A stretch of 64,000 nt of DNA from Octopus sinensis (GCF_006345805.1 NC_043002.1:23188001-23252000); one strand, 5' to 3'. Shown: positions 459-62,165, counted from the first letter of the stretch. The notes: a model not told the origin generated them from the letters alone. Numbers and translations: made by a program.

Positions 459-849
459 GGAGAGAGATGAAGAGATTTGTTGAGGTTCCAAGCTTTGCCT
501 TGTTAACCAATATGTAGAAGCATGTTTTTACTTCACTGAAAGTTGTTTATGCAATACATTTTGTGTATAATTATTTTTGCAGTTATTGTTTTATTGTAAT
601 GTAAACACATGTGAAAAGCTTAGTGTTTTTCCAGGTTTCTGAGCTGGTGCTTTTTTTCTTCTTGGCTTTTTTAGTTTTTTTTTTCTTTGTACTTGTTTCA
701 CTCGTTGGACTGCGGCCTTGCTGGGGCACCGCCTTGAAGAGTTTTAGTCGAAGAGATCGGTCCCAGTATTTTATTTTAAGTCTTTTATTCTATCGGTTCT
801 TTTGCCGAACAGTTGACTTACAAGGACGTAAACAAACCAACGTTGGCAG

Positions 850-895
<46 letters not shown>

Positions 896-903
896 TATAT
901 ATA

Positions 904-944
<41 letters not shown>

Positions 945-946
<2 letters not shown>

Positions 947-1106
947 CGCAGGAGTGGCTGTATGGTAAAAAACCTGCTTCCCAATCACATGGTCCCGGTT
1001 CAGTCCCACTGAGTGGCACCTTGGGCAAGTGTCTTCTACTATAGCCACGGGCTGACCAAAGCCTTGTGAGTGGATTTGGCAGACGGAAACTGAAAGAAGC
1101 CCGTCG
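945..1106 (+). mobile_element. tRNA-derived SINE family A (octopus OK/OR-type), 5' part
   Basis: GGCGCAGGAGTGGCTG head with A-box-like TGGCTGTATGG and B-box-like GGTTCAGTCCC. The same sequence recurs many times in the window. Confidence 0.85.
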
Positions 1107-1111
1107 TATAT

Positions 1112-1143
<32 letters not shown>

Positions 1144-2757
1144 CACACAACCAGCTTCCATGCAGTTTCCGTCAACTAAATTCACTCACGAGACATTGGT
1201 CGAGTCGGTCGGGCTACAGCATAAAACACTTACCCAAGACGTCGAGCAGAGGGACCGAACCCGTGACCACGTGGCTGCTAAGCTAGCTTCATTACCACAC
1301 TGCCACACTTAGTAATTTTAATTTCTTTGTTTTATTTTATATATTTTCTTGTAACAAATGTTATTCAGAAAACAAAGCATTTGTATTAGAAGAGTGTTTT
1401 ATTCGACGAGAGTTCCGGAGACTGCATTTCCTGTTCTTTTGAAATGGAGATAATGCATGGAATGCAAAGCCAGTTATAATGATTACTTCGATCACATGGG
1501 GCATAAGAATTTTGACCGTTTGTTTTGTAGCTGCATATTGTGAAGAAGGAAAACAAATGTTTGAAGAATATTAAGAACATTTTGTTTTTCTCTTTTTTTT
1601 TTTTTTACTTTTTGGTCAGGAAGGAAGGCGGTGCTATGGCCTTTTGCAGGGCCTCCAAGACTGTTGGAAGGGAGAAAGAGAGGAAAGTATCCTCAAATCG
1701 GAAATCTGGCCCGAATACTTGCAACAGAGTAGACTCTGCTTAAGGCACCGAGAATGCCAGCTGGAGGTATTAAACTGGGCAACGGACCTATAAGTCGTCT
1801 TTGCAGGTCATGGCAGGATTTGGACTCATAATGCAAGAGCCGGAATACTGCAAGGCATCCGATCTGATGGATTGATACCTTTATATCGATCTCCAAAGGG
1901 ATGAAAGGAAAGTAGCCTTCGGCGAAGTTTGAACACGGAGCTCAGAGAATCGGAACAAATTCCGCAAAACATTCTGCCTGAGGCTCTAACGACTCTGATA
2001 GTTTGCCGCCTTTGTTACATTAACGGTAACATAGTTCATGGCAGCTACAGTATGAATAGATACCGGCCCAATACAGATGAATTGGGCTGATACCTATCGA
2101 ATGATGGTAAGCTCGGATATTCCCAAAATTCTCCAAACCATTCATGATTTGTATAAAATCTGAATATAATCCTTAAAAAATATGTAAATAATTTTAACCG
2201 CAAACAACGAACGAATGGTATTTGAAACTACATAACTTTTTGAAGACGTAGTTTTTTTTCTTAAAATAGGAATTTTAATAGCGATGTCAGCCTTCCAAAA
2301 TAAACTGTCGCTATATTTAGTGTGCATTATTATTGACTCAGATGCTGGTAAAACATTTTAAGTAAACATTATTTGATACGAATACAGTCAAATTTAAATG
2401 TCAAACAAGAAACTGTATTTATTGCCTCCTTTGCTATTTGAAACCGCCTTCAGACTTTCTGAAAATATGATTGTTAAGTGAAGTATTTTAATTACCTATT
2501 CAACTCTCTGTACAGTGCTGTAACTATAATTCATCCTCTTCTCAGGACCCCAAAACAATTGCTTGGTACGTCTGTGCAACATACCGCGAAGGTTGCTAGA
2601 ATAATACTGTGGAAGAGATTGTAGTCTCGTGTTTTCTATACGAGATGAGGAGTGTTTTTGTTATCATTTTCTTTATTTGCTTACCATCCACTCCTCAGCA
2701 ACTTTTGCGTAGTCTCCAGGACGACGTGACAAAATACATTATATTAAGTGCAACATA

Positions 2758-2977
2758 GGCGCAGGAGTGGCTGTGTGGTAAGTAGCTTGCTTACCAACCA
2801 CATGGTTCCGGGTTCAGTTCCACTGCGTGGCATCTTGGGCAAGTGTCTTCTACTATAGTCTCGGGCCGACCAAAGCCTTGTGAATGGATTTGGTAGACGG
2901 AAACCCAAAGAAGCCCGTCGTATATATGCATATATATATACATACACACAACACACACACACACACACACACACCAC

Positions 2978-3035
<58 letters not shown>

Positions 3036-3267
3036 GTGTGTGTGTGTGTGTGTATGATTGTGTGTCTGTGTTGTCCCCCTAGCATTGCTTGACAACGGTG
3101 CTGGTGTGTTTATGTCGCCGTCACTTAGCGGCTCGGCAAAAGAGACCGATAGAATAAGTACTGGGCTTAAAAGGAATAAGTCCCGGGGTCGATTTGCTCG
3201 ACTAAAGGCGCTGCTCCAGCATGGCCGCAGTCAAATGACTGAAACAAGTAAAAGAGTAAAAGAGTAA
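2758..3267 (+). mobile_element. SINE family A, full length, with internal (TA)/(CA)/(TG) microsatellite
   Basis: tRNA-like head, internal microsatellite, conserved 3' part ending GACTGAAACAAGTAAAAGAG. Mirrored on the minus strand in the right palindrome arm. Confidence 0.88.
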
Positions 3268-5461
3268 GAGGAAAACAAACATCTCGAGTTTACGTATGTC
3301 ATGTACCACAAAGCGTTGATCGTCATTGAAAATACTGCACAGTCCATTGTTAGCAAGGATCTCGAACAGTAAAGACTACCAGCTCCAGTACGAACGGCAG
3401 TTCGTACTGTGACATTAAAAAAAACTGTAACAGTACATTCACTAAAATAAATTACTCTCAGTTCCAGATAGATAACGCTTATGCCAGGCTCAAGAAGACT
3501 AATACTATCTGGCCTGGTAGAAAAAGTTTCCTTTGATGCTTTGAGCGAAACAAATGCAAATTTGCTCATCAACTGTACTTGATAAAAAATTCGTTCCCTT
3601 AACAGATTGTTATGACAGTGGTCTCATCTGGGACAGTTATAACTTTACATACATATGACACAACTGCTCATTCTCCTTTTAAGCCATCACTCAACCTTAC
3701 ACACAAATGACACTCCCGTGTGTAGCACAGACAGAAGTTCTAAAGCAGGTCAAACTGAAAGTATGAGTGTACAACGTCTCACAGACTTGTATTTGAGGCT
3801 CTAAATTGCACCTGAGATTACACAAAACAATAAGTGGAGTTACACTTTACTAGTTCAGGGAAACTCTGCCTGTCATTGAAAGGGTACAAGATGAGCTGAG
3901 AGGATGCCTCAAGAAACCAACAATTGTAGATTAGAAGGAAAACTTAATCTTTCTACCGACACGAGAGTAGCACTTAACAGAGCCGTCTCAGTCGCCAAGT
4001 TTGCTAAAGTTTTAATTTAGCTGGGAATAATTGTGAGTTTACCAGAGTATGGAGAATTGAAAATAAAATTTTAAAAAGTGAAACGATCTTCAAGATATCT
4101 TTGCTACTGAAAGTACTCTCACAGGATTATTCTGTGAGAGTAAACTTTCAGTAGCAAAGATATCTTGAAGATCGTTTCACTTTTTAAAATTTTATTTTCA
4201 ATTCTCCATACTCTGGTAAACTCACAATTATTCCCAGCTAAATTAAAACTTTAGCAAACTTGGCGACTGAGACGGCTCTGTTAAGTGCTACTCTCGTGTC
4301 GGTAGAAAGATTAAGTTTTCCTTCTAATCTACAATTGTTGGTTTCTTGAGGCATCCTCTCAGCTCATCTTGTACCCTTTCAAATGACAGGCAGAGTTTCC
4401 CTGAAACTAGTAAAGTGTAACTCCACTTATGTTGTTTGTGTAATCTCAGGTGCAATTTAGAGCCTCAAATACAAGTCTGTGAGACGTTGTACACTCATAC
4501 TTTCAGTTTGACCTGCTTTAGAACTTCTGTCTGTGCTACACACGGGAGTGTCATTTGTGTGTAAGGTTGAGTGATGGCTTAAAAGGAGAATGAGCAGTTG
4601 TGTCATATGTATGTAAAGTTATAACTGTCCCAGATGAGACCACTGTCATAACAATCTGTTAAGGGAACGAATTTTTTATCAAGTACAGTTGATGAGCAAA
4701 TTTGCATTTGTTTCGCTCAAAGCATCAAAGGAAACTTTTTCTACCAGGCCAGATAGTATTAGTCTTCTTGAGCCTGGCATAAGCGTTATCTATCTGGAAC
4801 TGAGAGTAATTTATTTTAGTGAATGTACTGTTACAGTTTTTTTTAATGTCACAGTACGAACTGCCGTTCGTACTGGAGCTGGTAGTCTTTACTGTTCGAG
4901 ATCCTTGCTAACAATGGACTGTGCAGTATTTTCAATGACGATCAACGCTTTGTGGTACATGACATACGTAAACTCGAGAGTTTGTTTTCCTCTTACTCTT
5001 TTACTCTTTTACTTGTTTCAGTCATTTGACTGCGGCCATGTGGAGCAGCGCCTTTAGTCGAGCAAATCGACCCCGGGACTTATTCCTTTTAAGCCCAGTA
5101 CTTATTCTATCGGTCTCTTTTGCCGAGCCGCTAAGTGACGGCGACATAAACACACCAGCACCGGTTGTCAAGCAATGCTAGGGGGACAAACACAGACACA
5201 CAATCATACACACACACACACCACACACACACACACACACAACACACACACACATATATATATATATTATTATATATTATAATATATATATATATATTAG
5301 TTATCGCCATACTAATATGGCATCTTATTAAAAATAAGAAAAAAGCTGACCGCTTATTAGCTCCATGAGGCCATCGCCTTAAGTTAGCTATTGATACACA
5401 AACTGTATCCATATAACCTTTGAACAAGGGAGGTCAGTCGCTCCACACTACTTGGCCGGCA

Positions 5462-5503
5462 GCTACAGACGCGTTTCGGGGTATTGCCCCTTTTCAATGC
5501 AGC
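5462..5503 (-). ncRNA. Type I hammerhead ribozyme (U3-A8 variant), inverted copy
   Basis: Exact reverse complement of the motif in the direct units. Confidence 0.78.
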
Positions 5504-5673
5504 GTAGCCAAACCAGTAGGTGTCGCTTCCGACAATCTCTGTTCAAAGGTTATAGAGAGACTTAGTATTTTAATATTTCTATTATTGAAAACAAGTGGAT
5601 GTATTCCACCGAAGCTAGGTAAATAAAACCTTTGAACAGAGATTGTCGGAAGGGACACCACTGGTTTGGCTAC

Positions 5674-5715
5674 GCTGCATTGAAAAGGGGCAATACCCCG
5701 AAACGCGTCTGTAGC
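5674..5715 (+). ncRNA. Type I hammerhead ribozyme (U3-A8 variant), unit 1; predicted cleavage after C5709
   Basis: GCUGCA [stem I] UUGAAAA [core] GGGG-CAAUA-CCCC [stem II] GAAA C-GC-G [stem III, palindrome ACGCGU] UC, then UGUAGC [stem I']. Confidence 0.82.
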
Positions 5716-6037
5716 TGCGGCCAAGTAGTGTGGAGCGACTGACCTCCCTTGTTCAAAGGTTATATGGATACAGTTTGTGTATCAAATAGCTAACTTAAGG
5801 CGATGGCCTCATGGAGCTAATAAGCGGTCAGCTTTTTTCTTATTTTTATAAGAATGCCATATTAGTATGGCGATAACTAATATTTTCTGGGAACGCTGCC
5901 GTTGTTCTCTTTTAGAGAGAGACTTAGTAATTTTAATATTTCTATTATTGAAAACAAGTGGATGTATTCCACCGAAGCTAGGTAAATAAAACCTTTGAAC
6001 AGAGATTGTCGGAAGCGACACCTACTGGTTTGGCTAC

Positions 6038-6079
6038 GCTGCATTGAAAAGGGGCAATACCCCGAAACGCGTCTGTAGC
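6038..6079 (+). ncRNA. Type I hammerhead ribozyme (U3-A8 variant), unit 2
   Basis: Identical motif to unit 1. Confidence 0.82.
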
Positions 6080-6396
6080 TGCCGGCCAAGTAGTGTGGAG
6101 CGACTGACCTCCCTTGTTCAAAGGTTATATGGATACAGTTTGTGTATCAAATAGCTAACTTAAGGCGATGGCCTCATGGAGCTAATAAGGTCAGCTTTTT
6201 TTTATTTTATAAGAATGCCATATTAGTATGGCGATAACTAATATTTTCTGGGAACGCTGCCGTTGTTCTCTTTTAGAGAGACTTAGTAATTTTAATATTT
6301 CTATTATTGAAAACAAGTGGATGTATTCCACCGAAGCTAGGTAAATAAAACCTTTGAACAGAGATTGTCGGAAGCGACACCTACTGGTTTGGCTAC

Positions 6397-6438
6397 GCTG
6401 CATTGAAAAGGGGCAATACCCCGAAACGCGTCTGTAGC
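6397..6438 (+). ncRNA. Type I hammerhead ribozyme (U3-A8 variant), unit 3
   Basis: Identical motif to unit 1. Confidence 0.82.
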
Positions 6439-6754
6439 TGCCGGCCAAGTAGTGTGGAGCGACTGACTCCCTTGTTCAAAGGTTATATGGATACAGTTTG
6501 TGTATCAAATAGCTAACTTAAGGCGATGGCCTCATGGAGCTAATAAGCGGTCAGCTTTTCTATTTTTATAAGAATGCCATATTAGTATGGCGATAACTAA
6601 TATTTTCTGGGAACGCTGCCGTGTTCTCTTTTAGAGAGACTTAGTAATTTTAATATTTCTATTATTGAAAACAAGTGGATGTATTCCACCGAAGCTAGGT
6701 AATATAAAACCTTTGAACAGAGATTGTCGGAAGCGACACCTACTGGTTGGCTAC

Positions 6755-6796
6755 GCTGCATTGAAAAGGGGCAATACCCCGAAACGCGTCTGTAGC
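6755..6796 (+). ncRNA. Type I hammerhead ribozyme (U3-A8 variant), unit 4
   Basis: Identical motif to unit 1. Confidence 0.82.
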
Positions 6797-7115
6797 TGCC
6801 GGCCAAGTAGTGTGGAGCGACTGACCTCCCTTGTTCAAAGGTTATATGGATACAGTTGTGTATCAAATAGCTAACTTAAGGCGATGGCCTCATGGAGCTA
6901 ATAAGCGGTCAGCTTTTTTCTTATTTTTATAAGAATGCCATATTAGTATGGCGATAACTAATATTTTCTGGGAACGCTGCCGTTGTTCTCTTTTAGAGAG
7001 ACTTAGTAATTTTAATATTCTATTATTGAAAACAAGTGGATGTATTCCACCGAAGCTAGGTAAATAAAACCTTTGAACAGAGATTGTCGGAAGCGACACC
7101 TACTGGTTTGGCTAC

Positions 7116-7157
7116 GCTGCATTGAAAAGGGGCAATACCCCGAAACGCGTCTGTAGC
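7116..7157 (+). ncRNA. Type I hammerhead ribozyme (U3-A8 variant), unit 5
   Basis: Identical motif to unit 1. Confidence 0.82.
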
Positions 7158-7475
7158 TGCCGGCCAAGTAGTGTGGAGCGACTGACCTCCCTTGTTCAAA
7201 GGTTATATGGATACAGTTTGTGTATCAAATAGCTAACTTAGGCGATGGCCTCATGGAGCTAATAAGCGGTCAGCTTTTTTCTTATTTTTATAAGAATGCC
7301 ATATTAGTATGGCGATAACTAATATTTTCTGGGAACGCTGCCGTTGTTCTCTTTTGAGAGACTTAGTAATTTTAATATTTCTATTATTGAAAACAAGTGG
7401 ATGTATTCCACCGAAGCTAGGTAAATAAAACCTTTGAACAGAGATTTCGGAAGCGACACCTACTGGTTTGGCTAC

Positions 7476-7517
7476 GCTGCATTGAAAAGGGGCAATACCC
7501 CGAAACGCGTCTGTAGC
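7476..7517 (+). ncRNA. Type I hammerhead ribozyme (U3-A8 variant), unit 6
   Basis: Identical motif to unit 1. Confidence 0.82.
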
Positions 7518-7837
7518 TGCCGGCCAAGTAGTGTGGAGCGACTGACCTCCCTTGTTCAAAGGTTATATGGATAAGTTTGTGTATCAAATAGCTAACTAAG
7601 GCGATGGCCTCATGGAGCTAATAAGCGGTCAGCTTTTTTCTTATTTTTATAAGAATGCCATATTAGTATGGCGAGATAACTAATTTTTCTGGGAACGCTG
7701 CCGTTGTTCTCTTTTAGAGAGACTTAGTAATTTTAAATTTTCTATTATTGAAAACAAGTGGATGTATTCCACCGAAGCTAGGTAAATAAAACCTTTGAAC
7801 AGAGATTGTCGGAAGCGACACCTACTGGTTTGGCTAC

Positions 7838-7879
7838 GCTGCATTGAAAAGGGGCAATACCCCGAAACGCGTCTGTAGC
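7838..7879 (+). ncRNA. Type I hammerhead ribozyme (U3-A8 variant), unit 7
   Basis: Identical motif to unit 1. Confidence 0.82.
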
Positions 7880-9469
7880 TGCCGGCCAAGTAGTGTGGAG
7901 CGACTGACCTCCCTTGTTCAAAGGTTATATGGATACAGTTTGTGTATCAAATAGCTAACTTAAGGCGATGGCCTCATGGAGCTAATAAGCGGTCAGCTTT
8001 TTTCTTATTTTTATAAGAATGCCATATTAGTATGGCGATAACTAATATTTTCTGGGAACGCTGCCGTTGTTCTCTTTTAGAGAGACTTAGTAATTTTAAT
8101 ATTTCTATTATATATATATATATATATCTATATATATATGTTGTGTGTGTGTGTGTGTGTGTGTTGTGTTGTTGTGTATGTATATATATATGCATATATA
8201 CGACGGGCTTCTTTGGGTTTCCGTCTACCAAATCCATTCACAGGCTTTGGTCGGCCCGAGACTATAGTAGAAGACACTGCCCAAGATGCCACGCAGTGGA
8301 ACTGAACCCGGAACCATGTGGTTGGTAAGCAAGCTACTTCCCACACAGCCACTCCTGCGCCTATGTTGCACTTAATATATGTATTTTGTCACGTCGTCCT
8401 GGAGACTACGCAAAAGTTGCTGAGGAGTGGATGGTAAGCAAATAAAGAAAATGATAACAAAAACACTCCTCATCTCGTATAGAAAACACGAGACTACAAT
8501 CTCTTCCAAGTATTATTCTAGCAACCTTCGCGGTATGTTGCACAGACGTACCAAGCAATTGTTTTGGGGTCCTGAGAAGAGGATGAATTATAGTTACAGC
8601 ACTGTACAGAGAGTTGAATAGGTAATTAAAATACTTCACTTAACAATCATATTTTCAGAAAGTCTGAAGGCGGTTTCAAATAGCAAAGGAGGCAATAAAA
8701 CAGTTTCTTGTTTGACATTTAATTTGACTGTATTCGTATCAATAATGTTTACTTAAAATGTTTTACCAGCATCTGAGTCAATAATAATGCACACTAAATA
8801 TAGCGACAGTTTATTTTGGAAGGCTGACATCGCTATTAAAATTCCTATTTTAAGAAAAAAAACTACGTCTTCAAAAAGTTATGTAGTTTCAAATACCATT
8901 CGTTCGTTGTTTGCGGTTAAAATTATTTACATATTTTTTAAGGATTATATTCAGATTTTATACTTTATGCTGATAAAAGTAGAATACCTGAGTGCAGATA
9001 GTTATAAAATCTAAAATATATCCAAATTTTATATGAGCACAAACTTGTATACATGCACCTTAACTTACATACATAGTGACATATACTTATAGTGACATAC
9101 AGAGTAAACAGTCGACGATCTACTCTGGTGTTGTTTGTTCGTTCGAAGTCCTAACTCTCCATAAATTTTATATTTTTAAAATTTCTGGATGCTGCTGTCT
9201 TATGAAGTTTTCCCGTCTTGTCGTTGAAAGCTCTAAACAAGTATTAATAAACGGCCGACAAATGAGAAGGAATTAGACTTCCTTTAGTATTTTGTCCTGT
9301 ACTTATCTCTGTGTGTTTACGTATTTTTCACTCTTTCGTGATATCCTGTATTTAATGTGTATCTTTTTTTGTATTTATTTAGTATTTATCTCTCGTGTGT
9401 TTACATAATCTCTCGCTGATGATGCCCTGTAATTAATGTGTATTTTTAATTATTTTTAATTGAACGCCA

Positions 9470-9835
9470 CGCAGACTTTGTCAACAGTAAGATTTTCACT
9501 GAAGATTTAGGTATGAGATGTGTGTCTGCCAAGTTTGTGCCGAAACTACTTTCAGCTAACCAAAAAGACACTCAGATTTCAGTTACACAAGATCTCTTTG
9601 ATTCTGTTGAGAACGATGAAAACATTTTGAAAACTTTGAGTAAACCTCTGAGCAGATATTACCAAGCTTTTAGCAAATTTTGATGCAGATTCTCTGCTCA
9701 GCTTTCTCTGCCATGGTCAATGTGACGATCACACGCTACACACTTTTCTTCCAAGCACTGCTGTAAACAGCAGCAGTAAGCTAGAACGTTACAACTTGGT
9801 GCGTATGCACAGTAGAGTTTAAGGTCAATGTGCGA
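9470..9835 (+). mobile_element. Fragment of the mariner-derived element family also found at 10611-11455
   Basis: Reverse-complement match to ~10690-11020. Encodes TEDLGMRCVSAKFVPKLL, a mariner WVPxxL-like region. Confidence 0.7.
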
Positions 9836-10610: not shown

Positions 10611-11455
10611 CGTGATCTGATCAATAAGTATCCGGACTGTTGTAATAGTAACGGAACTAAAGCACGCAGAGCAAAACCGCTTTGCAAAGATTGACCTTAA
10701 ACTCTACTGTGCATGCGCACCAAGTTTTAACGTTCTAGCTTACTGCTGCTGTTTACAGCAGTGCTTGGAAGAAAAGTGTGTAGCGTGTGATCGTCATATT
10801 GACCTTGACAGAGAAAGTTGAGCTGAGAATCTGCATCAAAATTTTCTAAAAGCGATATCTGCTCAGAGACCTACTCAAAGTTTTCAAAATGTTTTCATCG
10901 TTCTCAACATATTCAAAGAGATCTTGTGTAACTGAAATCCGAGTGTCTTTTTGATAGCTGAAAGCAGTTTTGGCACAAACTTGGCAGACACGCGTCTCAT
11001 ACCCAAATCTTCAGTGACAATGGACTGAACTGAACCGGATGGTAATTCTACGATTTCTCTTCACAGCTACACGCACATCTGCGATGTTTTTCCAATTCTG
11101 CTGGCTGCATGTCTACCAGAATATTCTTCAATATCGATATTTTGCGGCCATCTTGGAAACATCTGAACCACTTGTACACATCTGTGCGGCTCATACACTC
11201 CTCTCCATACATTTTCTGCAACTTTGCTTTGGCCTCTGGGCAGGTATTGCCATGAAAACTTTCTCTGTCACGGTCAATGCGACGATCACACACTACACAC
11301 CTTCCTTCCAAGTACTGCCTTAAACAGCGAAAGTGAACTAGAACATAAAAACTTAGTGCACATGCACAGCAAAGTTCAAGGCCAAACGACTTCACTCTGC
11401 GTACTTTGGCTTCGTTACTATTGCAACAGTCCGGATACTTATTGATCAGACCTCG
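10611..11455 (-). mobile_element. Non-autonomous mariner derivative with TIRs and TA TSD
   Basis: TA|CGTGATCTGATCAATAAGTATCCGGACTGTTG ... CAACAGTCCGGATACTTATTGATCAGACCTCG|TA. Minus strand encodes transposase N-terminal remnants (KLQKMYGEECMSRTDVYKWF; DLGMRRVSAKFVPKLL). Confidence 0.85.
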
Positions 11456-12181
11456 TATACATGCTTGTCTGTGTAATCGTGTACGGACGAAGCAGGGACT
11501 TGATTTACCATTCAGTTCCTTCCAGAACATCATATAATAGAACAGTAACAGTAAATAACTTCCGCTTAGTTTAAAACTCATTGTCCGAATATTACTAACA
11601 AGTAAAATTATGTCCAACAACTGTTGTACGAAGAACCGATCTGGTTTCCAATCGAATCCATCACGATGATCACTCCATCACTCTCCTTTGGTCTACAAGT
11701 GCAGATAGTTTTCCTTTGGCGGCTGTAGCAAGAGATTGCAGGGTGGCTGGAGGCAGGAACTTTCCTCTTAACCAGGCCCTCGTCAACTTTGAATTTCACT
11801 GGAATAGGAGGTTATGGTGAAGGAAGAGGTGCTACCCCCAGAAAATACCCTGAAAATGAGTGATAGTGATGTATATAGTCCGAGTGACTGAACCTTTTAT
11901 CAGCATTCATCTCAGAGAAAACTTTTGTCGCTAATATTCAGAGAAATTATGACTCTGTCGGTTTCGTCGATTGGCCTTAGGAGGCTGACCTCTTATTGGG
12001 ACGCTTCAGTTTATTACACTTATGTACTTTGGTTTTCGCATGTAATTGTTTTGTTAATAATCAACCCAATATAAACCCCTACACTTTCTGTAATTCGTTC
12101 ATGTAATGTCCCCGCTTCCACCACCATTGCGGCAAATAAAAAGTCATGGCCATTACCAGCAGCACTAGCATAATGGTTTTG

Positions 12182-12810: not shown

Positions 12811-12967
12811 CTTTTCTCCATTTTAATTGTATTTTTCTTATTTTACTCTTAGTTGAAAAAAAAAGACGGAAACCAGTACTAAAATGTACTTCACGCTAAA
12901 ATTATTTTAGCATTTTCTACCTTGTCTTATTTTCATTATACATATCAACTCGCGTGTTACTTTTCTA

Positions 12968-18942: not shown

Positions 18943-19391
18943 GGATCTTTTCAGTTTGAACGGCAGTTTTTTATAGCGGTGTCATATGAAATTGTCACCC
19001 ATAATTATGACCCTAGAATCGATCTATTGCATTTCAATCCTTTTTAGGGTTAGGATTAGTTAGGGTTAGTTAGGGTTAGGGTTAGGATTAGGGGTGGGGA
19101 AAAGGTATCTTTTTTTCTTCACAAATGTAAATAAACCCAATCTGTTTCTTAAACGAGGGACATATTCATACGGCATAGAATGCTTTTTAACTCAATAGAC
19201 GTCACTGATTGGTTGAAATAGCAGAAATTGAAGGAAAAAAAATAACAAATATCTTACAAAATATAGAATTTTCTCAATAAAGCCAAGAGAAAAAGATGTT
19301 TTATAAACACATTCTACCAGTATATGAAGTTTAAAATTTTTTAGTTACCTAGAAATTATGTTAAAAACTGTCGTTTAAACCGAAAATATCC
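18943..19391. mobile_element. MITE with ~30-bp TIRs (GGATC...GATCC-type ends) and 8-bp TSD; Merlin-like
   Basis: GGTTATTT|GGATCTTTTCAGTTTGAACGGCAGTTTTT ... AAAAACTGTCGTTTAAACCGAAAATATCC|GGTTATTT. GG..CC termini with an 8-bp TSD fit the Merlin superfamily. Internal TTAGGG run. Confidence 0.75.
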
Positions 19392-23237: not shown

Positions 23238-23733
23238 CAGCACTGGATTAACCATTACGCAAAATAAGCACAAGGGCAACAAAGGAAGCGGGTGGCTCCA
23301 CAGAGATGGTAAATGGCTTACGACACAAAAGAAATCACTTTAAACTTATTGAAACAGTATTCGAAGTGATTTATACAAATGGAACTATAATTTCGAAGTA
23401 TTCTTGGTATCATAGAGAGGATCTGATCAAAAACTATGTAATTAACAAAAAAATTGGAGGAAAGTTTTCAGATATAAAAAAAAATGGAAGTATACAAAAA
23501 TTAACATCATTTTCTATCTTACTGTTTTGTTTCATTTTCAAAAAAAAAAAAGGATTTAATTTTTGGTTTATTATCGTGGTAAGAAGCTTGCTTACCAACC
23601 ACATAGTTCCGGGTTCAGTCCCACTGTGAGGTACCTTGGGCAAGTGTTTTCTACTGTAGCCTTGGGGCGACCAAAGCCTTGTGAGTAGATTTGGTAGACG
23701 GAAAATGAAAGAAGCCCGTCGTATATATGTATA

Positions 23734-23775
<42 letters not shown>

Positions 23776-24054
23776 TGTGTCTGTGTTTGTCCCCCCAACA
23801 TCACTTGACAACCGATGCTGGTGTGTTTACGTCCCCGTAACTTAGCGGTTCGGCAAAAGAGACTGATAGAATAAGTACTAGGCTTACAAAGAATAAGTCA
23901 TGGGGTCGATTTGCTCAACTAAAGGCAGTGCTCCAGCATGGCCGCAATCAATTGACTGAAACAAGTAAAAGAGTAAAAGAGTTTATATTTTGAATTACAT
24001 ATACATATAATCTTTTAAGTGCTTAGGGCCTCTATGGGTTTTGATCTGGCCCTG
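23238..24054. mobile_element. hAT-like MITE with a nested SINE-A (23576-23982)
   Basis: Ends CAGCACTGGATTAA ... TTGATCTGGCCCTG. 8-bp TSD GTAGTAGC/GTAGTAGT. Homologous copy without the SINE at 57325-57732. Confidence 0.75.
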
Positions 24055-24983: not shown

Positions 24984-25230
24984 CTGCATAATAACACATT
25001 AATAATCGCTTCGCTAATTTGCACTTACCTGTGTGGGTAAAACACGTTTATGTTACATATAGGCGTAGGAGTGGCTGTGTGGTAAGGGGGTGAGGTGGGA
25101 AAGCCATAATCTTTTATTTATTATGTGACATGTTTTGAATTCTTTGGGAGTGGTCAAATGGTGACGACACCGCTGATGAGAACAGAATACGACTGGAAAA
25201 TTGTCTAAGGCTGTTCATCATTTTTTTATA

Positions 25231-25362
25231 GGCTTAGGGGTGGCTGTGTGGTAAGTAGTTTGCTTACAAACCACATGGTTCTAATATAACCTCGGGATGA
25301 CTAAAGCCTTGTGAGCGGATTTGGTAGACGGAAACTGAAAGAAGCTCGTCGTATATATGTAG

Positions 25363-25405
<43 letters not shown>

Positions 25406-25610
25406 TTTGTCTGCCCGTGTTAGTCCCCCAACATCGCTTGACAACCGATGCTGGTGTGTTTACGTCCCCGTAACTTAGCGGTTCGGCAAAAGGGGCCGAT
25501 AGAATAAGTACTAGGCTTACAAAGAATAAGTCCTGGGGTCGATTTGCTCGACTAAAGGCGGTACTCCAGCATGGCCACAGTCACATGACTGAAACAAGTA
25601 AAAAAAAATA
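25231..25610 (+). mobile_element. SINE family A
   Basis: Head, internal microsatellite and 3' part as in 2758-3267. Confidence 0.85.
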
Positions 25611-26625: not shown

Positions 26626-27918
26626 CGAGGGGCGTTCAATAAGTAATGCCCCTGACCCACTTCCCATAGCAGTAGAGCAACGAAACTTGGCACAGTTATT
26701 AGTCTTTTTTTACATAGGAACCACTCAGAGTTACGCATTTCCCCCATCGTTTGATGCAGCTCTGGAGACCGTTTTTGTAGAAGACCCCAGCTTGGTCCTC
26801 CAACCACGATGTGACTTCAGAAATCAAGGCTGCATCATCTGGGAAACGCTTTCCTTTCAAAAACAACTTCATGGCTGGGAAGAGGTGAAAATCAGAGGGT
26901 GAAAGGTCAGGAGAGTAGGGGGATGGGGGAGGAGTTCATAGCTGCACGCCTGTGCTTCTGATCTGGCGACACGCGAGTTGTGGATCGGAGCGTTGTCCTG
27001 CAGGAGGAGGATGCCTTTGCTGATCTTGCCCCGCCTCTTGATTTTGATAGCTTCTCTTAATTTCTTCAAAAGTGAAGCATAATAGGCTCCTGTAATTGTG
27101 GTACCCTTTGCCAGGAAATCTGTCATCACTACTCCGTCCTGGTCCCAGAAGACTGTGAGCATGACCTTGCCAGCGGAGGGCTGCACCCTTGCCTTCTTTG
27201 GAGGAGGTGAGTCACGGTGCTTCCACTGCATTGACTGGGTTTTGGTCTCTGGATCATAGTGATGGGCCCAGGTCTCATCCTGTGTAATCAGTCTTCTGAA
27301 AAATTTTGACTCATCTTCTTGGCACATCTCCAAATTCATCCTCGAGCACTCGACGCATTCTTGCTTCTGGAAAGGTGTGAGCAACCTGGGAATCCATCTG
27401 GCAGACACCTTTTGCATATGCAAATGGTCATGAATGATAGTTTCCACAGACCCGGTACTAATCTTGACCTCATGGGCTATTTGGCGAATAGTTATGCGTC
27501 GATCTTCCAAAATGGCAGCCTCAACTTGACGGACAGATGCCTCATCAATGGCAGAAGGGGGGGCGACCAGATCTGGGAGCTGTTTCCACAGAGTTCCGAC
27601 CATGTTTGAATTCACGATGCCAGCGTTTTACAAGGTCATATGATGGGGCATCATCACCATAAGTTACTTTCATTTCATCAAAAGTCTCCCGTGGTGTGCG
27701 TCCTTTCAAATACAAAAACCGGATCACTGCTCGACACTCAACAGGCTCCATTTCACACTTGACTCTGTTCAAACACCTGTAAATCAGAAACCACAATTAG
27801 TTCAGAGCTGTAATTTGCCACTTAATCTATAGAGATATAAATAATTGCACATGCAAAATTTCAGCTAGATCAAACAACTGCAAGTGGGTTAGGAGCATTA
27901 CTTATTGAACGTCCCTCG
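26626..27918 (-). mobile_element. Full-length mariner (DD34D) transposon, 1293 bp
   Basis: TA|CGAGGGGCGTTCAATAAGTAATG ... CATTACTTATTGAACGTCCCTCG|TA, i.e. TIRs with TA TSD. Confidence 0.95.
26699..27751 (-). CDS. Mariner transposase (~350 aa) with two 1-bp frameshifts in G homopolymers
   Basis: [13 protein letters not shown]...GRP (HTH), [28 protein letters not shown]. +1 in G7 at 27557-27563 and -1 in G5 at 26918-26922. No in-frame stops seen. Confidence 0.9.
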
Positions 27919-37150: not shown

Positions 37151-37290
37151 AAATATGCTTCCCTCGTGTCTAAATTAGAATCAATTAATAAATAAAACAT
37201 AGGATGCATGCATGCATGTATGTATGTATGTAAGTATGTATGTATGTATGTAAGTATGTATGTATGCATGTATGTACGTATGTATATTTA

Positions 37291-37462
37291 GGCGCAGGAG
37301 TAGCTGTGTGGTAAGTAGCTTCCTTAGCAACCTTACCAACCACATGGTTCCGGGTTCAGTCCCACTGCGTGACACATTGGGCAAGTATCTTCTGCTATAG
37401 CCTCGGGCCGACCAAAGCCTTGTGAGTAGATTTGGTAGACGAAAACTGAAAGAGGCCCGTCG

Positions 37463-37493
<31 letters not shown>

Positions 37494-37704
37494 ATTTTTG
37501 TGTGTCTGTGATTGTTCCCCCAACATCGCTTAACAACCGATGCTGGTGTGTTTACATCCCCGTAACTTAGCGGTTCGGCAAAAGAAACCGATAGAATAAG
37601 TACTAGGCTTACAAAGAATAAGTCCTGGGTAGATTTGCTCGACTAAAGGCGGTGCTCCAGCATGGTCGCAGTCAAATGACTGAAACAAGTAAAAGAGTAA
37701 AAGA
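37291..37704 (+). mobile_element. SINE family A, full length
   Basis: Matches 2758-3267. Confidence 0.88.
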
Positions 37705-37719
37705 ATAGATAGATAGATC

Positions 37720-48517: not shown

Positions 48518-49761
48518 AACTGGCAAAGTCGTTAGAACGTCTGTAATTGTAATTGTTCCGACGTTTTACGACTTGCGTTCAAAGTTCAAATTCCTCCGGG
48601 AGTAGCTTTGCTTTTGATTCTTATGGGATGGTAATGGTCGATAGATGGAATATCGATGCAGGGCAACAGACGCGAGGAATTGTTTGAGACTTATATTTCA
48701 GTATCTGCTATGGCAATTTGCGCTCTGAAGACAAAAGCCTGCGACAACGCGTGTGGTACACTGTATCGGACATCATTAGTGTCCGGGAACATAGCGGACT
48801 GCACGCATGCGCAACCTTTAGGTTTTCACAAAAAATCTCCTCTCGAGTCTTGCTCATTCACTACCTTATAAGATATTTCGTTGTCGTCATTTATCGTGCG
48901 CTTAGCAGCGCATTGATGGCACTACAACGAAAGTCTTCCATATACAAAGTTCACCCATCGGATGAATTTATAACGTTACTTCGTTTTGACTTTCTCATAG
49001 TGTTTTCTTGGCAGATATATTGAGATGGTTTATCATTGCCTTCCTCAACTGAATAGCTGTTGGCCCACAAGGAGATCATCCGCCCTTCGATAGGTCTTGT
49101 TTTTAGTTCTGTTAGACACCCTTTTCACAAGAGTAGCAAACTACACAAACAAGGGAGCCGGTTTAGTCGGTGACCACTTTGTGATGGACGCCGGAATTCC
49201 AATGTCATGTGATTTCACCGTACAGGAAATTATCAATGGGAAGCCTTCCGGTCATTACCTGCCTGTCAAATCTCGCTGCTACGATGTTTAGAATATCAAC
49301 ATCTTTTCAGGAAAAGTGGCATGAGGGGACTTGATGCTTCCTACTGATGATTTCCAGCAGAATGAAATCACGGGATATGGGAATTCTGTTGCCAATGACA
49401 GACGATTCTCGTCTGCTAAGATTTATGTGTTTACTTTTATGCACCAACCACCGATATCAAGGGATCTCTCAAGGCTAATAACACAGTTTTCGGTTTTCTA
49501 GCATGAAATCCATGTTAAGTTGGATATAAAGATCGCCTTTTCGTATTAATGCTGATTCCGTCACTAATAATTAATTTTATATAGCTAATAATTAATAATT
49601 AATAATTAACTGGCAAAGTCGTTAGAACGTCTGTAATTGTAATTGTTCCGACGTTTTACGACTTGCGTTCAAAGTTCAAATCCCTCCGGGAGTAGCTTTG
49701 CTTTTGATTCTTATGGGATGGTAATGGTCGATAGATGGAATATCGATGCAGGGCAACAGAC
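48518..49761 (+). repeat. 154-bp near-perfect direct repeat (48518-48671 and 49608-49761) around ~940 bp of unique sequence
   Basis: AACTGGCAAAGTCGTTAGAACGTCTG...CGATGCAGGGCAACAGAC occurs twice with about one difference. Confidence 0.92.
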
Positions 49762-54314: not shown

Positions 54315-55185
54315 GCGGCGAGCTGACAGAAACGTTAGCACGCTGGGCGAAATGCTTAGCGGTATTTCGGCTGCCGCTACGTTCTGAGTTCAAATTCCGC
54401 CGAGGTCGACTTTGCCTTTTATCCTTTCGGGGTCGATATAATCGACTTAATCCGTTTGTCTGTCCTTGTTTGTCCTCTCTGTGTTTAGCCCCTTGTGGGT
54501 AGTAAAGAAATAGGTATTTCGGCTGCTGTTACGTTCTGAGTTCAAATTCCGCCGAGGTTGACTTTGCCTTTCATCCTTTCGGGGTCGATTAAATAAGTAC
54601 CAGTTACGCACCGGGGTCGATTTAATCGATTTAATCCGTTTGTCTGTCCTTGTTTGTCCCTCTATGTTTAGCCCCTTGTGGGTAGTAAAGAAACAAGTAT
54701 TTCGTCTGTCTTTTCGTTCTGAGTTCAAATTCCGCCGAGGTCGACTATTCCTTTCATTCTTTTGGGGTCGATTAAATAAGTACCTGTTACGCACTGGGTT
54801 CGATGTAATCGACTTAATCCGTTTGTCTGTCCTTGTTCGTCCCCTCTGTGTTTAGCCCCTTGTGGGTAGTAAAGAAATAGGTATTTCGCCCGTCGCTACG
54901 TTGTGAGTTCAAATTCCCCCGAAGTCGACTTTGCCTTTCGGGGTCAATAAAATAAGTGCCAATCAAGCACTAGAGTCGATGTAATCGACTAGTTCCCTCC
55001 CCCTAAATTTCAGGCTTTGTACCTATAATAGTAAGGATTATTATTATTATTGCGAGTCGCCGAGGTTGACTTTGCCTTTCATCCTTTAGGAGTCGGTGAA
55101 ATAAATACCAGTTACGCACTGGGGGTCGATGTAATCGACTTGCCCTTCCCCTCAAATTTCAGGCCTTGTACTTACATTAGAAAGG

Positions 55186-60350: not shown

Positions 60351-60604
60351 TATTTATATATTTGTGATTTAATTGTGTGTGGTGTGTGTGTGTGTGTGTG
60401 TCAGCCATCGCTGACAACCTACATTGGTGTGTTTACGTTCCCGAAACTTAGTGGTTCGGCAAAAGAGACCGATAGATTAAGGCTTACAAAAAGTAGATTC
60501 TGAGGTCAATTCCTTCGACTAAAGGCAGTGCTCAGCATGGCCACAGTCAAATGACTGAAACAAGTAAAAGAATAAAAGAATATATATATATATATAAAAA
60601 TATT

Positions 60605-60641
<37 letters not shown>

Positions 60642-61250
60642 CATATATATATATATTTTATTTTATCTAGTTTCAGCTCACGAGCTGTGGCCATGCTGGG
60701 GCACCGCCATATATATATATATACATATATACACACGCACACATACATAATACACTTGCCTCATATACATGCTCTCACACGTAAACACGTACACAGACGT
60801 ACACATACATACACACACACACACATACACACACACACACACATAAACACAGATGCAACAGTCACAAGAGGAATGGATTTTTTTCATTCCGAAGAATTTT
60901 CATTGAAATATGGAAATATATATGTGGTACTTATTTTTTTTTATTTTTTAATATTCTCCTTGGATGATCGATAATGCGGTTGAGTAGCAGCAACAGCAGC
61001 CGTAGTAGCAGCAGCAACAGCAGCAGCAGTTGCAGTAGTAGTGGTAGTAATAATTATGTTGTTGTCGTCGTCGTTGTTGTTGCGGCTGCTGCTGTTATTG
61101 TTATATCCAGAATTTCTATTATATAAATATATATATATATATGAGCGGGTCTGTGCACATATATGTAAAAGTATGTGTGGGTGAATGACATATATATGTA
61201 TAATATATATTATATATATAATATATATATATATATATAATATATATATA

Positions 61251-61414
61251 GGCGCAGGAGTGGCTGTGTGGTAAGTAGCTTGGCTTACCAACCACATGGT
61301 TCCAGGTTCAGTCCCACTGCGTGGCATCTTGGGGAAATGTCTTCTACTATAGCTTCGGACCGACCAAAGCCTTGTAAGTGGATTTGGTAGATGGAAACTG
61401 AAAGAAGCCGTCGT
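61251..61414 (+). mobile_element. SINE family A, 5' part
   Basis: Matches 2758 onward. Confidence 0.85.
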
Positions 61415-61491
61415 ATATATATGTGTGTGTCTCTGTATGCATGTATGCATGTATATATATATATATATATAATAACTTTCTTGACAACCTA

Positions 61492-61573: not shown

Positions 61574-62165
61574 TAGGTTGTCAAGAAAGTTCTGGCAGTC
61601 TTTAACCATTAAATTCAGATGTTCATATCTCGGCTCAAACAAAACTTTATTAATCGAAATAAATACCATCAGAACCAACACACTTTCGCCAACGCGAAAC
61701 AAGTTTATTTATGCCAGTAGCGTAAAAAATCCTGCGTTCTCGTGGCGATGAAGTCGTTGAAGACGTGTTCGGCATTGTCTTGATTTTTGAAGCATTTCTC
61801 ACGCAGGAACTTGTGTCGTGATGCTTGAAAAAGTCGTGGTTGGTAGGCGAGATGTCTGGTGTGTATGGCGGATGAGACAGAGTTTCGTAGCCCAATTCGT
61901 TCAACTTCTGCAGGGTCAGTTGTGCGACGTGCGGTCGAGCATTGTCGTGGAGAAGAATTGGTCCTTTTCTATTGACCAATGCTGGCTGTTGTCGGAGTTT
62001 CTTATGTATTTCATCCATTTACTAACTGTACTTCTCTGCCGTAATGGTTTCGCCTGGATCCAAAAAGCTGTGATAAATGAGACCGGCCGCAGACTACCAA
62101 ACAGTCACCATGAAATTCTTTTAGTGAAACTTTGGCTTCAGGAAGTGCCGTAGAGCTTCGTCAGC
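61573..62165 (-). mobile_element. 5'-truncated mariner (3' half of transposase plus 3' TIR)
   Basis: RKGPILLHDNARPH...HPPYTPDISPT. TIR TA|TTAGGTTGTCAAGAAAGTT. Confidence 0.88.

What the first reader, a model, noticed from the sequence alone, without database searches (positions are those of the whole stretch)
5294..8111. Eight-copy hammerhead ribozyme array with a compensatory U3-A8 core: a candidate octopus retrozyme
Seen: each ~361-bp unit contains GCUGCA-UUGAAAA-GGGG(CAAUA)CCCC-GAAA-CGCG-UC-UGUAGC. All three helices of a type I hammerhead pair, and the cleavage triplet is GUC. The core differs from CUGANGA at exactly positions 3 and 8. Established: C3 and G8 form a tertiary Watson-Crick pair in the full-length hammerhead, and the U3-A8 double change preserves that pair. 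Loop II (CAAUA) and the UAC internal loop in the extended stem I resemble the loop contacts of the Schistosoma Sm-alpha hammerhead. The tiny palindromic stem III (ACGCGU) is typical of Penelope-type and non-LTR retrozyme hammerheads that cleave as dimers, which tandem copies would allow. Inference: transcripts would be cut into ~361-nt monomers able to circularise. A standard CUGANGA motif search would miss this family.
Basis: partly seen in the sequence, partly recalled or inferred. Interest (0 to 1): 0.93.

Follow-up and report, generated by a model that had tools for sequence, protein, structure and literature searches.

The report
Tandem hammerhead retrozyme with U3-A8 core
A 2.8-kb block of ~363-bp repeats, each carrying a self-cleaving hammerhead ribozyme motif with a known but uncommon compensated core, looks like a recently inserted small circular-RNA-making retroelement (a "retrozyme"): a new member of a known class, not a new kind of ribozyme.

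Summary
The 42-nt motif occurs 8 times without a mismatch, but 7 copies are direct (5555..8111, +) and one lies in an inverted, 5'-truncated copy (5294..5554, -). The motif is a complete type I hammerhead except for U3/A8 in place of C3/G8. A covariance model built only from four experimentally validated retrozyme hammerheads (coral, mussel, two axolotl) finds all 8 copies as the window's top hits (32 bits, E~6e-7). Shuffles give no descriptor hits. Rfam finds nothing. A dimeric transcript folds, unconstrained, into the classical double hammerhead with a 6-bp ACGCGU:ACGCGU helix III; the monomer has helices I and II only. A ~99%-identical copy of both flanks elsewhere in the window (2418..3560) carries an uninterrupted (AC)n(AT)n(TG)n microsatellite, so the array is an insertion into a (TA)n tract. 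The layout matches that reported for Penelope-like-element insertions. Natural U3-A8 hammerheads were published in 2011 and 2014, so the core is not new. No related copies could be retrieved, so covariation, activity, circles and the "octopus" label remain untested. Verdict: a probable non-LTR retrozyme and a new member of a known kind; moderate interest.

The parts
5555..8111 (+). Direct tandem array, about 7.1 units of a 363-nt consensus (40.8% GC). It begins at consensus position 207 and ends at position 238, counting position 1 as the first nucleotide after the cleavage site.
   Evidence: TRF; unit alignment; placement on the consensus; GC
5294..5554 (-). Inverted, 5'-truncated copy (consensus 277 through the hammerhead to 175) abutting the upstream end of the direct array. 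Its hammerhead is at 5503..5462 and its C17 at 5468.
5674..5715 (+). Hammerhead motif copy 1 (helix I 5' strand, UUGAAAA, helix II/loop 2, GAAA, CGCG, UC, helix I 3' strand). Predicted cleavage is after C5709.
6038..6079 (+). Hammerhead motif copy 2, C17 = 6073
6397..6438 (+). Hammerhead motif copy 3, C17 = 6432
6755..6796 (+). Hammerhead motif copy 4, C17 = 6790
7116..7157 (+). Hammerhead motif copy 5, C17 = 7151
7476..7517 (+). Hammerhead motif copy 6, C17 = 7511
7838..7879 (+). Hammerhead motif copy 7, C17 = 7873
6708..6843 (+). One example of the extended hammerhead domain: ~50-nt 5' arm (AACCUUUGAACAG...), core, and ~50-nt 3' arm (...UGUUCAAAGGUU) that prolong helix I, with a UAC/U internal loop above the 6-bp proximal helix I. 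The same domain starts at 5627, 5990, 6349, 7068, 7429 and 7790.
5186..5293 (.). Left target microsatellite, (CA)n then (TA)n
8112..8181 (.). Right target microsatellite, (TA)n then (TG)n
2940..3071 (.). Empty site: an uninterrupted (AC)n(AT)n(TG)n microsatellite. It lies in the ~99%-identical inverted copy (2418..3560) of the array's two flanks.

Best explanation
This is a non-autonomous, non-LTR retrozyme: a ~363-nt non-coding unit carrying a type I hammerhead ribozyme with the U3-A8 variant of the C3-G8 core pair. It is present as an insertion of about 7 tandem copies plus an inverted truncated copy inside a (TA)n microsatellite. The proposed mechanism runs as follows, and every step from transcription onward is inferred. 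The array is transcribed as a multimer. Neighbouring hammerheads pair their palindromic ACGCGU segments into a 6-bp helix III, forming a double hammerhead whose helices I form in trans between adjacent copies. Each copy then cuts after the C of GUC. [quoted passage not shown] A host tRNA-type ligase circularises them, and the circle has no stable helix III, so it resists re-cleavage. A reverse transcriptase from an autonomous Penelope-like element copies the circle or multimer by target-primed, rolling-circle synthesis at a nicked (TA)n site. That yields tandem copies, and priming from the second strand yields the inverted 5'-truncated copy. Shown here: the motif and its significance, the predicted folds, and the insertion status and layout.
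For: Motif: 8 exact copies. Every conserved core position is canonical except the 3/8 pair, which is changed to another Watson-Crick pair. By my own count, 3 of 702 possible double substitutions in the core would do this. Independent model: a CM built from coral, mussel and axolotl retrozyme hammerheads taken from PMC7229834 suppl. Table 2 hits all 8 copies full-length at 32 bits, E~6e-7, as the top hits of the window. A strict descriptor gives 0 hits in 300 + 20,000 shuffles. Architecture is the same as the validated mussel motif, GCGUCA-CUGAUGA-GUCU-UUUGU-AGAC-GAAA-CGCGCG-UC|UGGCGU, in a 353-nt unit. It also fits the published description of metazoan type I HHRs: helix I 6 bp, helix II 4 bp, helix III 1-2 bp with a small palindromic loop. 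Folding: the monomer gives -124 kcal/mol, z = -6.6, with helices I and II in the MFE. The dimer MFE is the double hammerhead, 5.5 kcal/mol better than any structure without helix III, with pair probabilities 0.83-0.99. Retrozyme features: tandem units of 363 bp, 40.8% GC, no ORF with any homologue, and 7 units, the maximum reported for 75% of retrozyme families. Mobility: the flanks are contiguous in a 99%-identical copy and in older SINE-like copies. Tandem copies, an upstream inverted 5'-truncated copy and a (TA)n target are the layout described for PLE insertions (PMC8557442). Both outer ends fall in UA-rich unit sequence (CUAAUAU, CUAUUAU), giving microhomology to the target. U3-A8 cores occur naturally, and 3/8 covarying ribozymes were reported active in vitro (PMC3088659; PMC4209133).
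Against: There are no homologous copies from any other locus or genome, so no covariation supports helices I/II or the 3/8 pair. The 8 copies are effectively one observation. No Rfam hammerhead model matches even at E<=10. My model is built from only 4 sequences and its calibration is rough. It gave one clear false positive at 18.5 bits inside mariner coding sequence. PLE-associated dimeric hammerheads showed only low activity in vitro. No Penelope-like RT/GIY-YIG ORF is seen in the window. ORFs read from the unit have no match among 5.8 billion proteins predicted from public assemblies, which argues weakly against an abundant, highly expressed family. The surrounding 2-kb-arm spacerless palindrome and the indel noise suggest assembly problems, so copy number and the inverted copy could be partly artefactual. 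During transcription the local cis hairpin may form first and compete with the double hammerhead.
Confidence: 0.72

Rival explanations
1. A dead relic. The repeat descends from a hammerhead-bearing element (a retrozyme or a Penelope pLTR), but the ribozyme no longer cleaves at a useful rate. The array is now plain low-copy satellite DNA amplified by DNA-level processes such as unequal exchange or replication slippage.
For: No activity, expression or covariation data are available. Dimeric PLE hammerheads cleave poorly in vitro. The two core changes are both transitions. The unit's ORFs have no match in public assemblies.
Against: Both changes fall on the one pair whose covariation is documented as natural and functional, and every other core position is intact. 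The copies differ by 5 substitutions in 2.8 kb, so there has been no time for decay. The array is an insertion with a PLE-type layout and did not grow in situ as a satellite. The dimer fold is the catalytic topology.
Confidence: 0.17
2. The repeat consists of terminal (pLTR) fragments of an autonomous Penelope-like element, left as a solo tandem and inverted remnant. It is not a separate non-autonomous retrozyme family.
For: pLTRs carry type I or minimal hammerheads, including U3-A8 variants, and PLE insertions form partial tandems with an inverted 5'-truncated copy. Retrozymes are reported to be closely related to pLTRs.
Against: There is no RT or GIY-YIG coding sequence in or next to the array. 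Seven complete head-to-tail units with no internal ORF fit the retrozyme description. The motif is a full hammerhead with a helix II loop and an internal loop in helix I, unlike the minimal PLE form.
Confidence: 0.08
3. A chance resemblance or an assembly artefact. A hairpin-rich tandem repeat happens to look like a hammerhead, or the array, inverted copy and palindrome were created by fold-back or chimeric long reads.
For: A spacerless 2-kb-arm palindrome surrounds the site. The arms and the copies differ mostly by 1-nt indels. Rfam finds nothing.
Against: Shuffles give 0 descriptor hits. The independent CM gives E~6e-7. A simple fold-back read would give two identical arms, yet only one arm carries the array. 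An artefact could change copy number or orientation but could not invent the unit sequence.
Confidence: 0.03

Closest known systems
Metazoan non-LTR retrozymes (Cervera and de la Pena 2020, PMC7229834), especially the Mytilus galloprovincialis retrozyme
   Same: Head-to-tail repeats of ~350-390 bp, low GC and no coding capacity. Each unit has one type I hammerhead with a 6-bp helix I, a 4-bp helix II, a 5-nt loop 2 and a CG-palindromic helix III directly before UC (mussel GAAACGCGCGUC; here GAAACGCGUC). The monomer is predicted to be highly self-paired.
   Different: The core pair is U3-A8 where the mussel has C3-G8. Helix I is extended to ~50 bp. Only one locus is known, and RNA circles and cleavage have not been shown. 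The source organism is unverified.
Penelope-like element hammerheads, including the U3-A8 variant of Schistosoma mansoni Cercyon PLEs (Cervera and de la Pena 2014, PMC4209133)
   Same: The U3-A8 covariation in the core; a helix III too short to work as a monomer, so action as a dimer is predicted; and an insertion layout of tandem plus inverted 5'-truncated copy in a microsatellite.
   Different: PLE motifs are mostly minimal: they lack helix III and loop contacts, are heterogeneous and occur singly in pLTRs flanking an RT-EN ORF. Here the hammerhead is full-size, sits in ORF-less tandem units, and has no PLE ORF nearby.
Newt satellite 2 and axolotl retrozyme hammerheads and Schistosoma Sm-alpha satellite hammerheads (classical dimer-active type I motifs)
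   Same: Type I topology within a tandem repeat of a few hundred bp. A palindromic helix III allows a double hammerhead. The axolotl motifs GAAACACGUGUA and GAAACAUGUC are direct analogues.
   Different: Those have canonical C3-G8 cores.
Rfam hammerhead families (Hammerhead_1, _3, _II, HH9, HH10)
   Same: The same ribozyme class.
   Different: None of these models scores the motif, even at E<=10 in a 161-nt search. A canonical-core motif elsewhere in the window reaches only 16.7 bits with HH9.

Membership tests
Hammerhead ribozyme, type I | Conserved core C3 U4 G5 A6 N7 G8 A9 / G12 A13 A14 / A15.1-U16.1 / H17 | tested here: met
   The motif reads UUGAAAA / GAA / A..U / C. Every position is canonical except 3 and 8, which form U-A in place of C-G. 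This exact covariation is documented in natural hammerheads. It is met as the known variant, not as the strict consensus.
Hammerhead ribozyme, type I | Three helices around the core, with helix I open and helices II and III closed | tested here: met
   Helix I (6 bp, extended to ~50 bp) and helix II (4 G-C pairs) are in the MFE of the monomer. Helix III is absent in the monomer and forms as a 6-bp intermolecular-type helix in the dimer MFE.
Hammerhead ribozyme, type I | Match to a curated family model (Rfam) | tested here: not met
   No hammerhead hit at gathering score or at E<=10.
Hammerhead ribozyme, type I | Match to a sequence-plus-structure model of experimentally validated retrozyme hammerheads | tested here: met
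   Model R1, built from 4 validated sequences with the window sequence left out, gives 32 bits, E~6e-7, full length, as the top 8 hits. Caveat: it is a small model, and 18-23-bit hits are unreliable.
Hammerhead ribozyme, type I | Compensatory changes in the helices among homologues | not testable with these tools
   All 8 motif copies are identical. There are no diverged copies in the window and no relatives in the viral, metagenome, prokaryote or protein collections.
Hammerhead ribozyme, type I | Site-specific self-cleavage | not testable with these tools
   This needs in vitro transcription of monomer and dimer constructs.
Non-LTR (metazoan) retrozyme | Short tandem repeats (150-450 bp), each with one type I hammerhead, and GC below 45-50% | tested here: met
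   The consensus is 363 nt with 7.1 direct units and one motif per unit. GC is 40.8%. Criteria come from PMC7229834.
Non-LTR (metazoan) retrozyme | No LTR/PBS/PPT and no protein-coding capacity | tested here: met
   There are only short ORFs; the longest open frame on the consensus is 111 codons, and none has a homologue. PBS and PPT were not specifically searched.
Non-LTR (metazoan) retrozyme | Monomer RNA predicted to be stable and highly self-paired, with the hammerhead free to form | tested here: met
   z = -6.6 against shuffles. The circular fold is 65% paired, with helices I and II intact.
Non-LTR (metazoan) retrozyme | Mobile element: an insertion relative to an empty site | tested here: met
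   The flanks are contiguous in the 99%-identical copy at 2418..3560 and in older SINE-like copies, and the array sits inside the (TA)n tract. No target-site duplication can be called inside a microsatellite.
Non-LTR (metazoan) retrozyme | Expressed as linear and circular ~170-400-nt RNAs | not testable with these tools
   No transcriptome of the source organism is available here.
Non-LTR (metazoan) retrozyme | Co-occurrence with autonomous Penelope-like elements in the same genome | tested here: inconclusive
   No RT/GIY-YIG ORF of 120 aa or more is present in the 64-kb window.
Autonomous Penelope-like element | A single ORF with RT and GIY-YIG endonuclease, flanked by pLTRs | tested here: not met
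   There is no such ORF in or next to the array. The only transposase-like ORFs in the window are mariner-type.

The most novel reading that the evidence does not exclude
This is a currently active retrozyme family whose hammerhead uses U3-A8 as its working core pair, in a lineage where no ribozyme-derived circular RNA has been reported (if the window is indeed cephalopod). The presence/absence difference between two ~99%-identical arms would then record a very recent, possibly still polymorphic, mobilisation. It would also imply that censuses of animal hammerheads and retrozymes based on CUGANGA descriptors or Rfam models undercount whole families.
Probability: 0.4. Interest if true: 0.55.

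Novelty: new member of a known kind. Interest (0 to 1): 0.42.

Why it matters
If confirmed at the bench, this would add a mollusc lineage beyond bivalves to the animals that make small circular RNAs through self-cleaving ribozymes. It would be a natural tandem-repeat retrozyme built on the U3-A8 core and a convenient natural test of how that pair affects cleavage. It would also be an unusually clean insertion, with an empty site, a (TA)n target and an inverted 5'-truncated copy, linking retrozyme integration to Penelope-type machinery. In addition, it shows concretely that curated hammerhead models and strict descriptors miss such elements. None of this changes the current picture of hammerheads or retrozymes; it extends it.

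Tried and rejected
(1) Rfam at gathering score and at E<=10 on 3 kb and on 161 nt found no hammerhead hit for the array. The weak miRNA and sRNA hits there only reflect the long inverted repeat.
(2) I searched for diverged copies of the unit in the rest of the window with nhmmer and blastn and found none.
(3) I used spurious ORFs through the unit as handles into 5.8 billion predicted proteins and found none. A consensus-ORF check showed that a second search would add nothing, so I did not spend it.
(4) I scanned metagenome, viral and prokaryote genome collections with the DNA pattern GCATTGAAAAN{12,14}GAAACGCGTC. The 4 hits are all chance matches in bacterial coding sequence without a helix II.
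(5) I tried to name the organism through the mariner-like ORF. The closest proteins are unnamed, and the one long contig fetched (L005) shares only the mariner and none of the window's SINE-like repeats.
(6) Literature searches for an octopus or cephalopod hammerhead or retrozyme found nothing on record in the held library. One of these searches was badly framed and uninformative.
(7) The model hit at 10981..11020(-) was rejected as a hammerhead. It lies in conserved mariner transposase coding sequence, has GAGA where GAAA is required, and has a helix I mismatch.
(8) The letter-level comparison of loop 2 and the UAC loop with Sm-alpha could not be checked, because the reviews held give no sequences.

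Full report
WHAT IS THERE. Tandem Repeats Finder reports an array at 5553..8111 with period 361, 7.1 copies and 97% matches. The 42-nt string GCTGCATTGAAAAGGGGCAATACCCCGAAACGCGTCTGTAGC occurs eight times without a mismatch, and none is expected in shuffles. Seven copies are on the + strand, starting at 5674, 6038, 6397, 6755, 7116, 7476 and 7838. One is on the - strand (5503..5462). The stretch 5294..5554 is therefore not an eighth direct unit. It is an inverted, 5'-truncated copy that abuts the upstream end of the direct array. The predicted cleavage-site cytidines are at 5709, 6073, 6432, 6790, 7151, 7511 and 7873, and at 5468 on the minus strand. The majority consensus of the cleavage-to-cleavage monomer is 363 nt with 40.8% GC. 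Across all pieces of the array there are 5 substitutions and 24 indel events, many in homopolymers. The copies are thus essentially identical, and much of the apparent length variation (358-364 nt) looks like long-read consensus noise. The window consequently holds no covariation information.

IS IT A HAMMERHEAD? Read as RNA, the motif is: helix I 5' strand GCUGCA; core U3 U4 G5 A6 A7 A8 A9; helix II GGGG, loop CAAUA, CCCC; G12 A13 A14; A15.1 CGCG U16.1; C17; helix I 3' strand UGUAGC. Every conserved position is canonical except 3 and 8, which are U and A where the consensus has C and G. I ran three tests of significance.

(a) A strict descriptor allowed any Watson-Crick 3/8 pair, helix I of at least 6 bp, helix II of at least 4 bp and short loops. 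It finds the 8 copies, with 0 hits in 300 dinucleotide shuffles of the window and 0 in 20,000 shuffles of the unit.

(b) I built a covariance model from the four hammerheads of experimentally validated retrozyme constructs (coral, mussel, two axolotl families) printed in supplementary Table 2 of PMC7229834. The window sequence was left out. Run over the whole window with filters off, the model puts the eight copies at the top, full-length, at 32 bits and E about 6e-7.

(c) The architecture is the one described for canonical metazoan type I hammerheads: helix I 6 bp, helix II 4 bp, helix III 1-2 bp capped by a small palindromic loop (PMC4209133). It is nearly superimposable on the validated mussel motif GCGUCA-CUGAUGA-GUCU-UUUGU-AGAC-GAAA-CGCGCG-UC|UGGCGU, which sits in a 353-nt unit.

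Against this, no Rfam hammerhead model scores the motif, at gathering thresholds, at E<=10 on 3 kb or on 161 nt. My small model also has limits. Its 18.5-bit hit at 10981..11020(-) lies inside conserved mariner transposase coding sequence and is a false positive. Its 23.2-bit hit at 49338..49383 has a canonical core but does not adopt the hammerhead in the MFE. The 32-bit array hits stand clear of that grey zone.

THE U3-A8 CORE. By a simple count, 3 of the 702 possible double substitutions in the 13 conserved positions would do so. That argues against random decay. The variant is not new, however. Perreault et al. [quoted passage not shown] Cervera and de la Pena 2014 found the U3-A8 core in a Schistosoma Penelope-like element, and a descriptor allowing it retrieved about 1,300 hits (PMC4209133).

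FOLDING AND LIKELY MODE OF CLEAVAGE. The monomer folds to -124 kcal/mol against -88.9 +/- 5.3 for shuffles (z = -6.6). Its MFE contains hammerhead helices I and II, and helix I is prolonged to about 50 bp through a UAC/U internal loop. The circular fold is 65% paired and likewise has no helix III. ACGCGU cannot close on itself, but it is a palindrome. I folded a 500-nt construct with two motifs. Its unconstrained MFE (-190 kcal/mol) is the classical double hammerhead: both helix II hairpins, helix I formed in trans between adjacent copies, and a continuous 6-bp ACGCGU:ACGCGU helix III. This is 5.5 kcal/mol better than the best structure without helix III, and the helix III pair probabilities are 0.83-0.99. 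Two 52-nt hammerhead fragments cofold the same way, at -40.7 against 2 x -17.3 kcal/mol. This is the dimer mechanism established for newt, viroid and axolotl motifs. It predicts cleavage in multimeric transcripts and stability of the monomer or circle. These are thermodynamic predictions only. During transcription, the local cis hairpin could form first and compete.

IT IS AN INSERTION. The 485 bp left of the array and the 519 bp right of it match, at 99.4% and 99.0% and in inverted orientation, one contiguous stretch at 2418..3560. There the two flanks are separated only by a compound (AC)n(AT)n(TG)n microsatellite at 2940..3071. In the filled copy the array sits inside the (TA)n part, with some 27 extra TA-rich bases. 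The same flanks are also contiguous, around a microsatellite, in older copies (about 89% identity) at 23576..23982, 37289..37707 and elsewhere. The host sequence is thus a SINE-like repeat with an internal microsatellite. The array was therefore inserted and did not grow in place.

The layout is what Craig et al. 2021 describe for Penelope-like element insertions: tandem copies, an inverted 5'-truncated copy at the upstream end, and a TA microsatellite target. [quoted passage not shown] Penelope-like elements are the proposed mobilisers of animal retrozymes (PMC7229834; preprint 10.64898/2026.07.22.740005). Both outer ends of the insertion fall in UA-rich unit sequence (CUAAUAU and CUAUUAU). 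That fits priming of reverse transcription by nicked (TA)n DNA on both strands, but this is an inference.

WHAT IT MOST LIKELY IS. It is most likely a non-LTR retrozyme, meaning a non-coding, hammerhead-bearing, tandemly integrated retroelement. It meets the structural criteria of the family: tandem 150-450-bp units with one type I hammerhead each, GC below 45-50%, no coding capacity, and a self-paired monomer. Seven units is also the maximum reported for 75% of retrozyme families. The criteria that need RNA or a whole genome were not testable. These are circular RNA, cleavage, co-resident Penelope-like elements, and covariation among family members. No Penelope RT/endonuclease ORF lies in the window.

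RIVALS. There are three. A dead relic amplified at the DNA level (0.17) is disfavoured by the compensated pair, the intact core, the youth of the copies and the insertion layout. Solo pLTR fragments of an autonomous Penelope-like element (0.08) are disfavoured by seven ORF-less full units and the full-size motif. Chance or artefact (0.03) is disfavoured by the statistics and by the asymmetry of the palindrome arms.

CAVEATS. The array lies in one arm of a spacerless palindrome: 2980..5289 is self-complementary with its centre near 4134, and 2151..3015 pairs with 8106..8963. The arms differ mostly by homopolymer indels. I cannot tell whether this is a true inverted duplication, two alleles mis-joined, or a fold-back artefact. 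It does not affect the unit sequence but could affect copy number and orientation. ORFs read from the unit have no match in a very large collection of proteins predicted from public assemblies. This is weak evidence that the family is not abundant or highly expressed in sequenced samples. The 'octopus' attribution could not be verified. The letter-level Sm-alpha loop comparison rests on memory.

NOVELTY AND SCORE. The ribozyme class, its dimer mode, the U3-A8 variant, the retrozyme life cycle and the Penelope-type insertion layout are all published. What is apparently new is this particular family. No cephalopod hammerhead or retrozyme is reported in the held literature. The combination of a U3-A8 core with a full-size hammerhead in a tandem retrozyme is also new, as is a clean filled/empty pair. 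This is a new member of a known kind. Interest is 0.42.

Noticed in passing
window 2151..8963 (centre ~4134): A large spacerless palindrome. 2980..5289 is self-complementary at 98%, and 2151..3015 pairs with 8106..8963 at 98.3%. The arms differ mainly by 1-nt homopolymer indels and by the presence of the 2.8-kb array in the right arm only. It could be a real inverted duplication, a haplotype mis-join or a fold-back assembly artefact.
   Followed up: partly
window 49338..49383 (+): A solitary type I hammerhead-like motif with a canonical core: UUCCUA-CUGAUGA-UUUC-CAGCA-GAAU-GAAA-UCACGGGAU-A|UGGGAA. It scores 23.2 bits with my model and 16.7 bits with Rfam HH9. It has a U-U at 10.1/11.1, and the MFE prefers another fold. 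It is possibly a relic of a hammerhead-bearing element, possibly chance.
   Followed up: partly
window 10981..11020 (-), inside inverted repeat 9492..9829 / 10690..11021: A hammerhead-model hit (18.5 bits) that is really conserved mariner transposase coding sequence (..TEDLGMRRVSAKFVPKLL..). It is a false positive and a reminder that CUGANGA..GA[AG]AC-like strings occur in this transposase family. The two 92%-identical inverted arms are mariner fragments.
   Followed up: yes
window 4995..5185 and 8182..8365; also 23576..23982, 37289..37707, 25228..25603, 60412..61420, 771..1175: An abundant SINE-like repeat made of a tRNA-like head, an internal compound microsatellite (CA/TA/TG) and a body. 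The hammerhead array is inserted in the internal microsatellite of one copy.
   Followed up: partly
window 26869..27615 (-), 61650..62018 (-), 11048..11620 (-): Mariner/SETMAR-like transposase ORFs (Pfam Transposase_1, HTH_48 in homologues). The closest relatives, at 90-93% identity, are in unnamed Logan and ENA contigs, including a contig (L005) from a genome that shares nothing else with the window. That pattern is compatible with horizontal spread.
   Followed up: partly
L005 12393..12436 (-) and 12889..12932 (+): In the unrelated ENA contig, two identical weak hammerhead-like motifs (16.1 bits, CUGAAGA..GAAACAUGU) lie ~450 bp apart on opposite strands. This arrangement is described for Penelope-like element minimal hammerheads.
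   Followed up: no
window 19044..19093: A short interstitial run of TTAGGG-like telomeric repeats (9 copies, degenerate).
   Followed up: no
window 54428..54939: A 183-bp tandem repeat, 2.8 copies, 89% matches. It is unrelated to the hammerhead unit.
   Followed up: no
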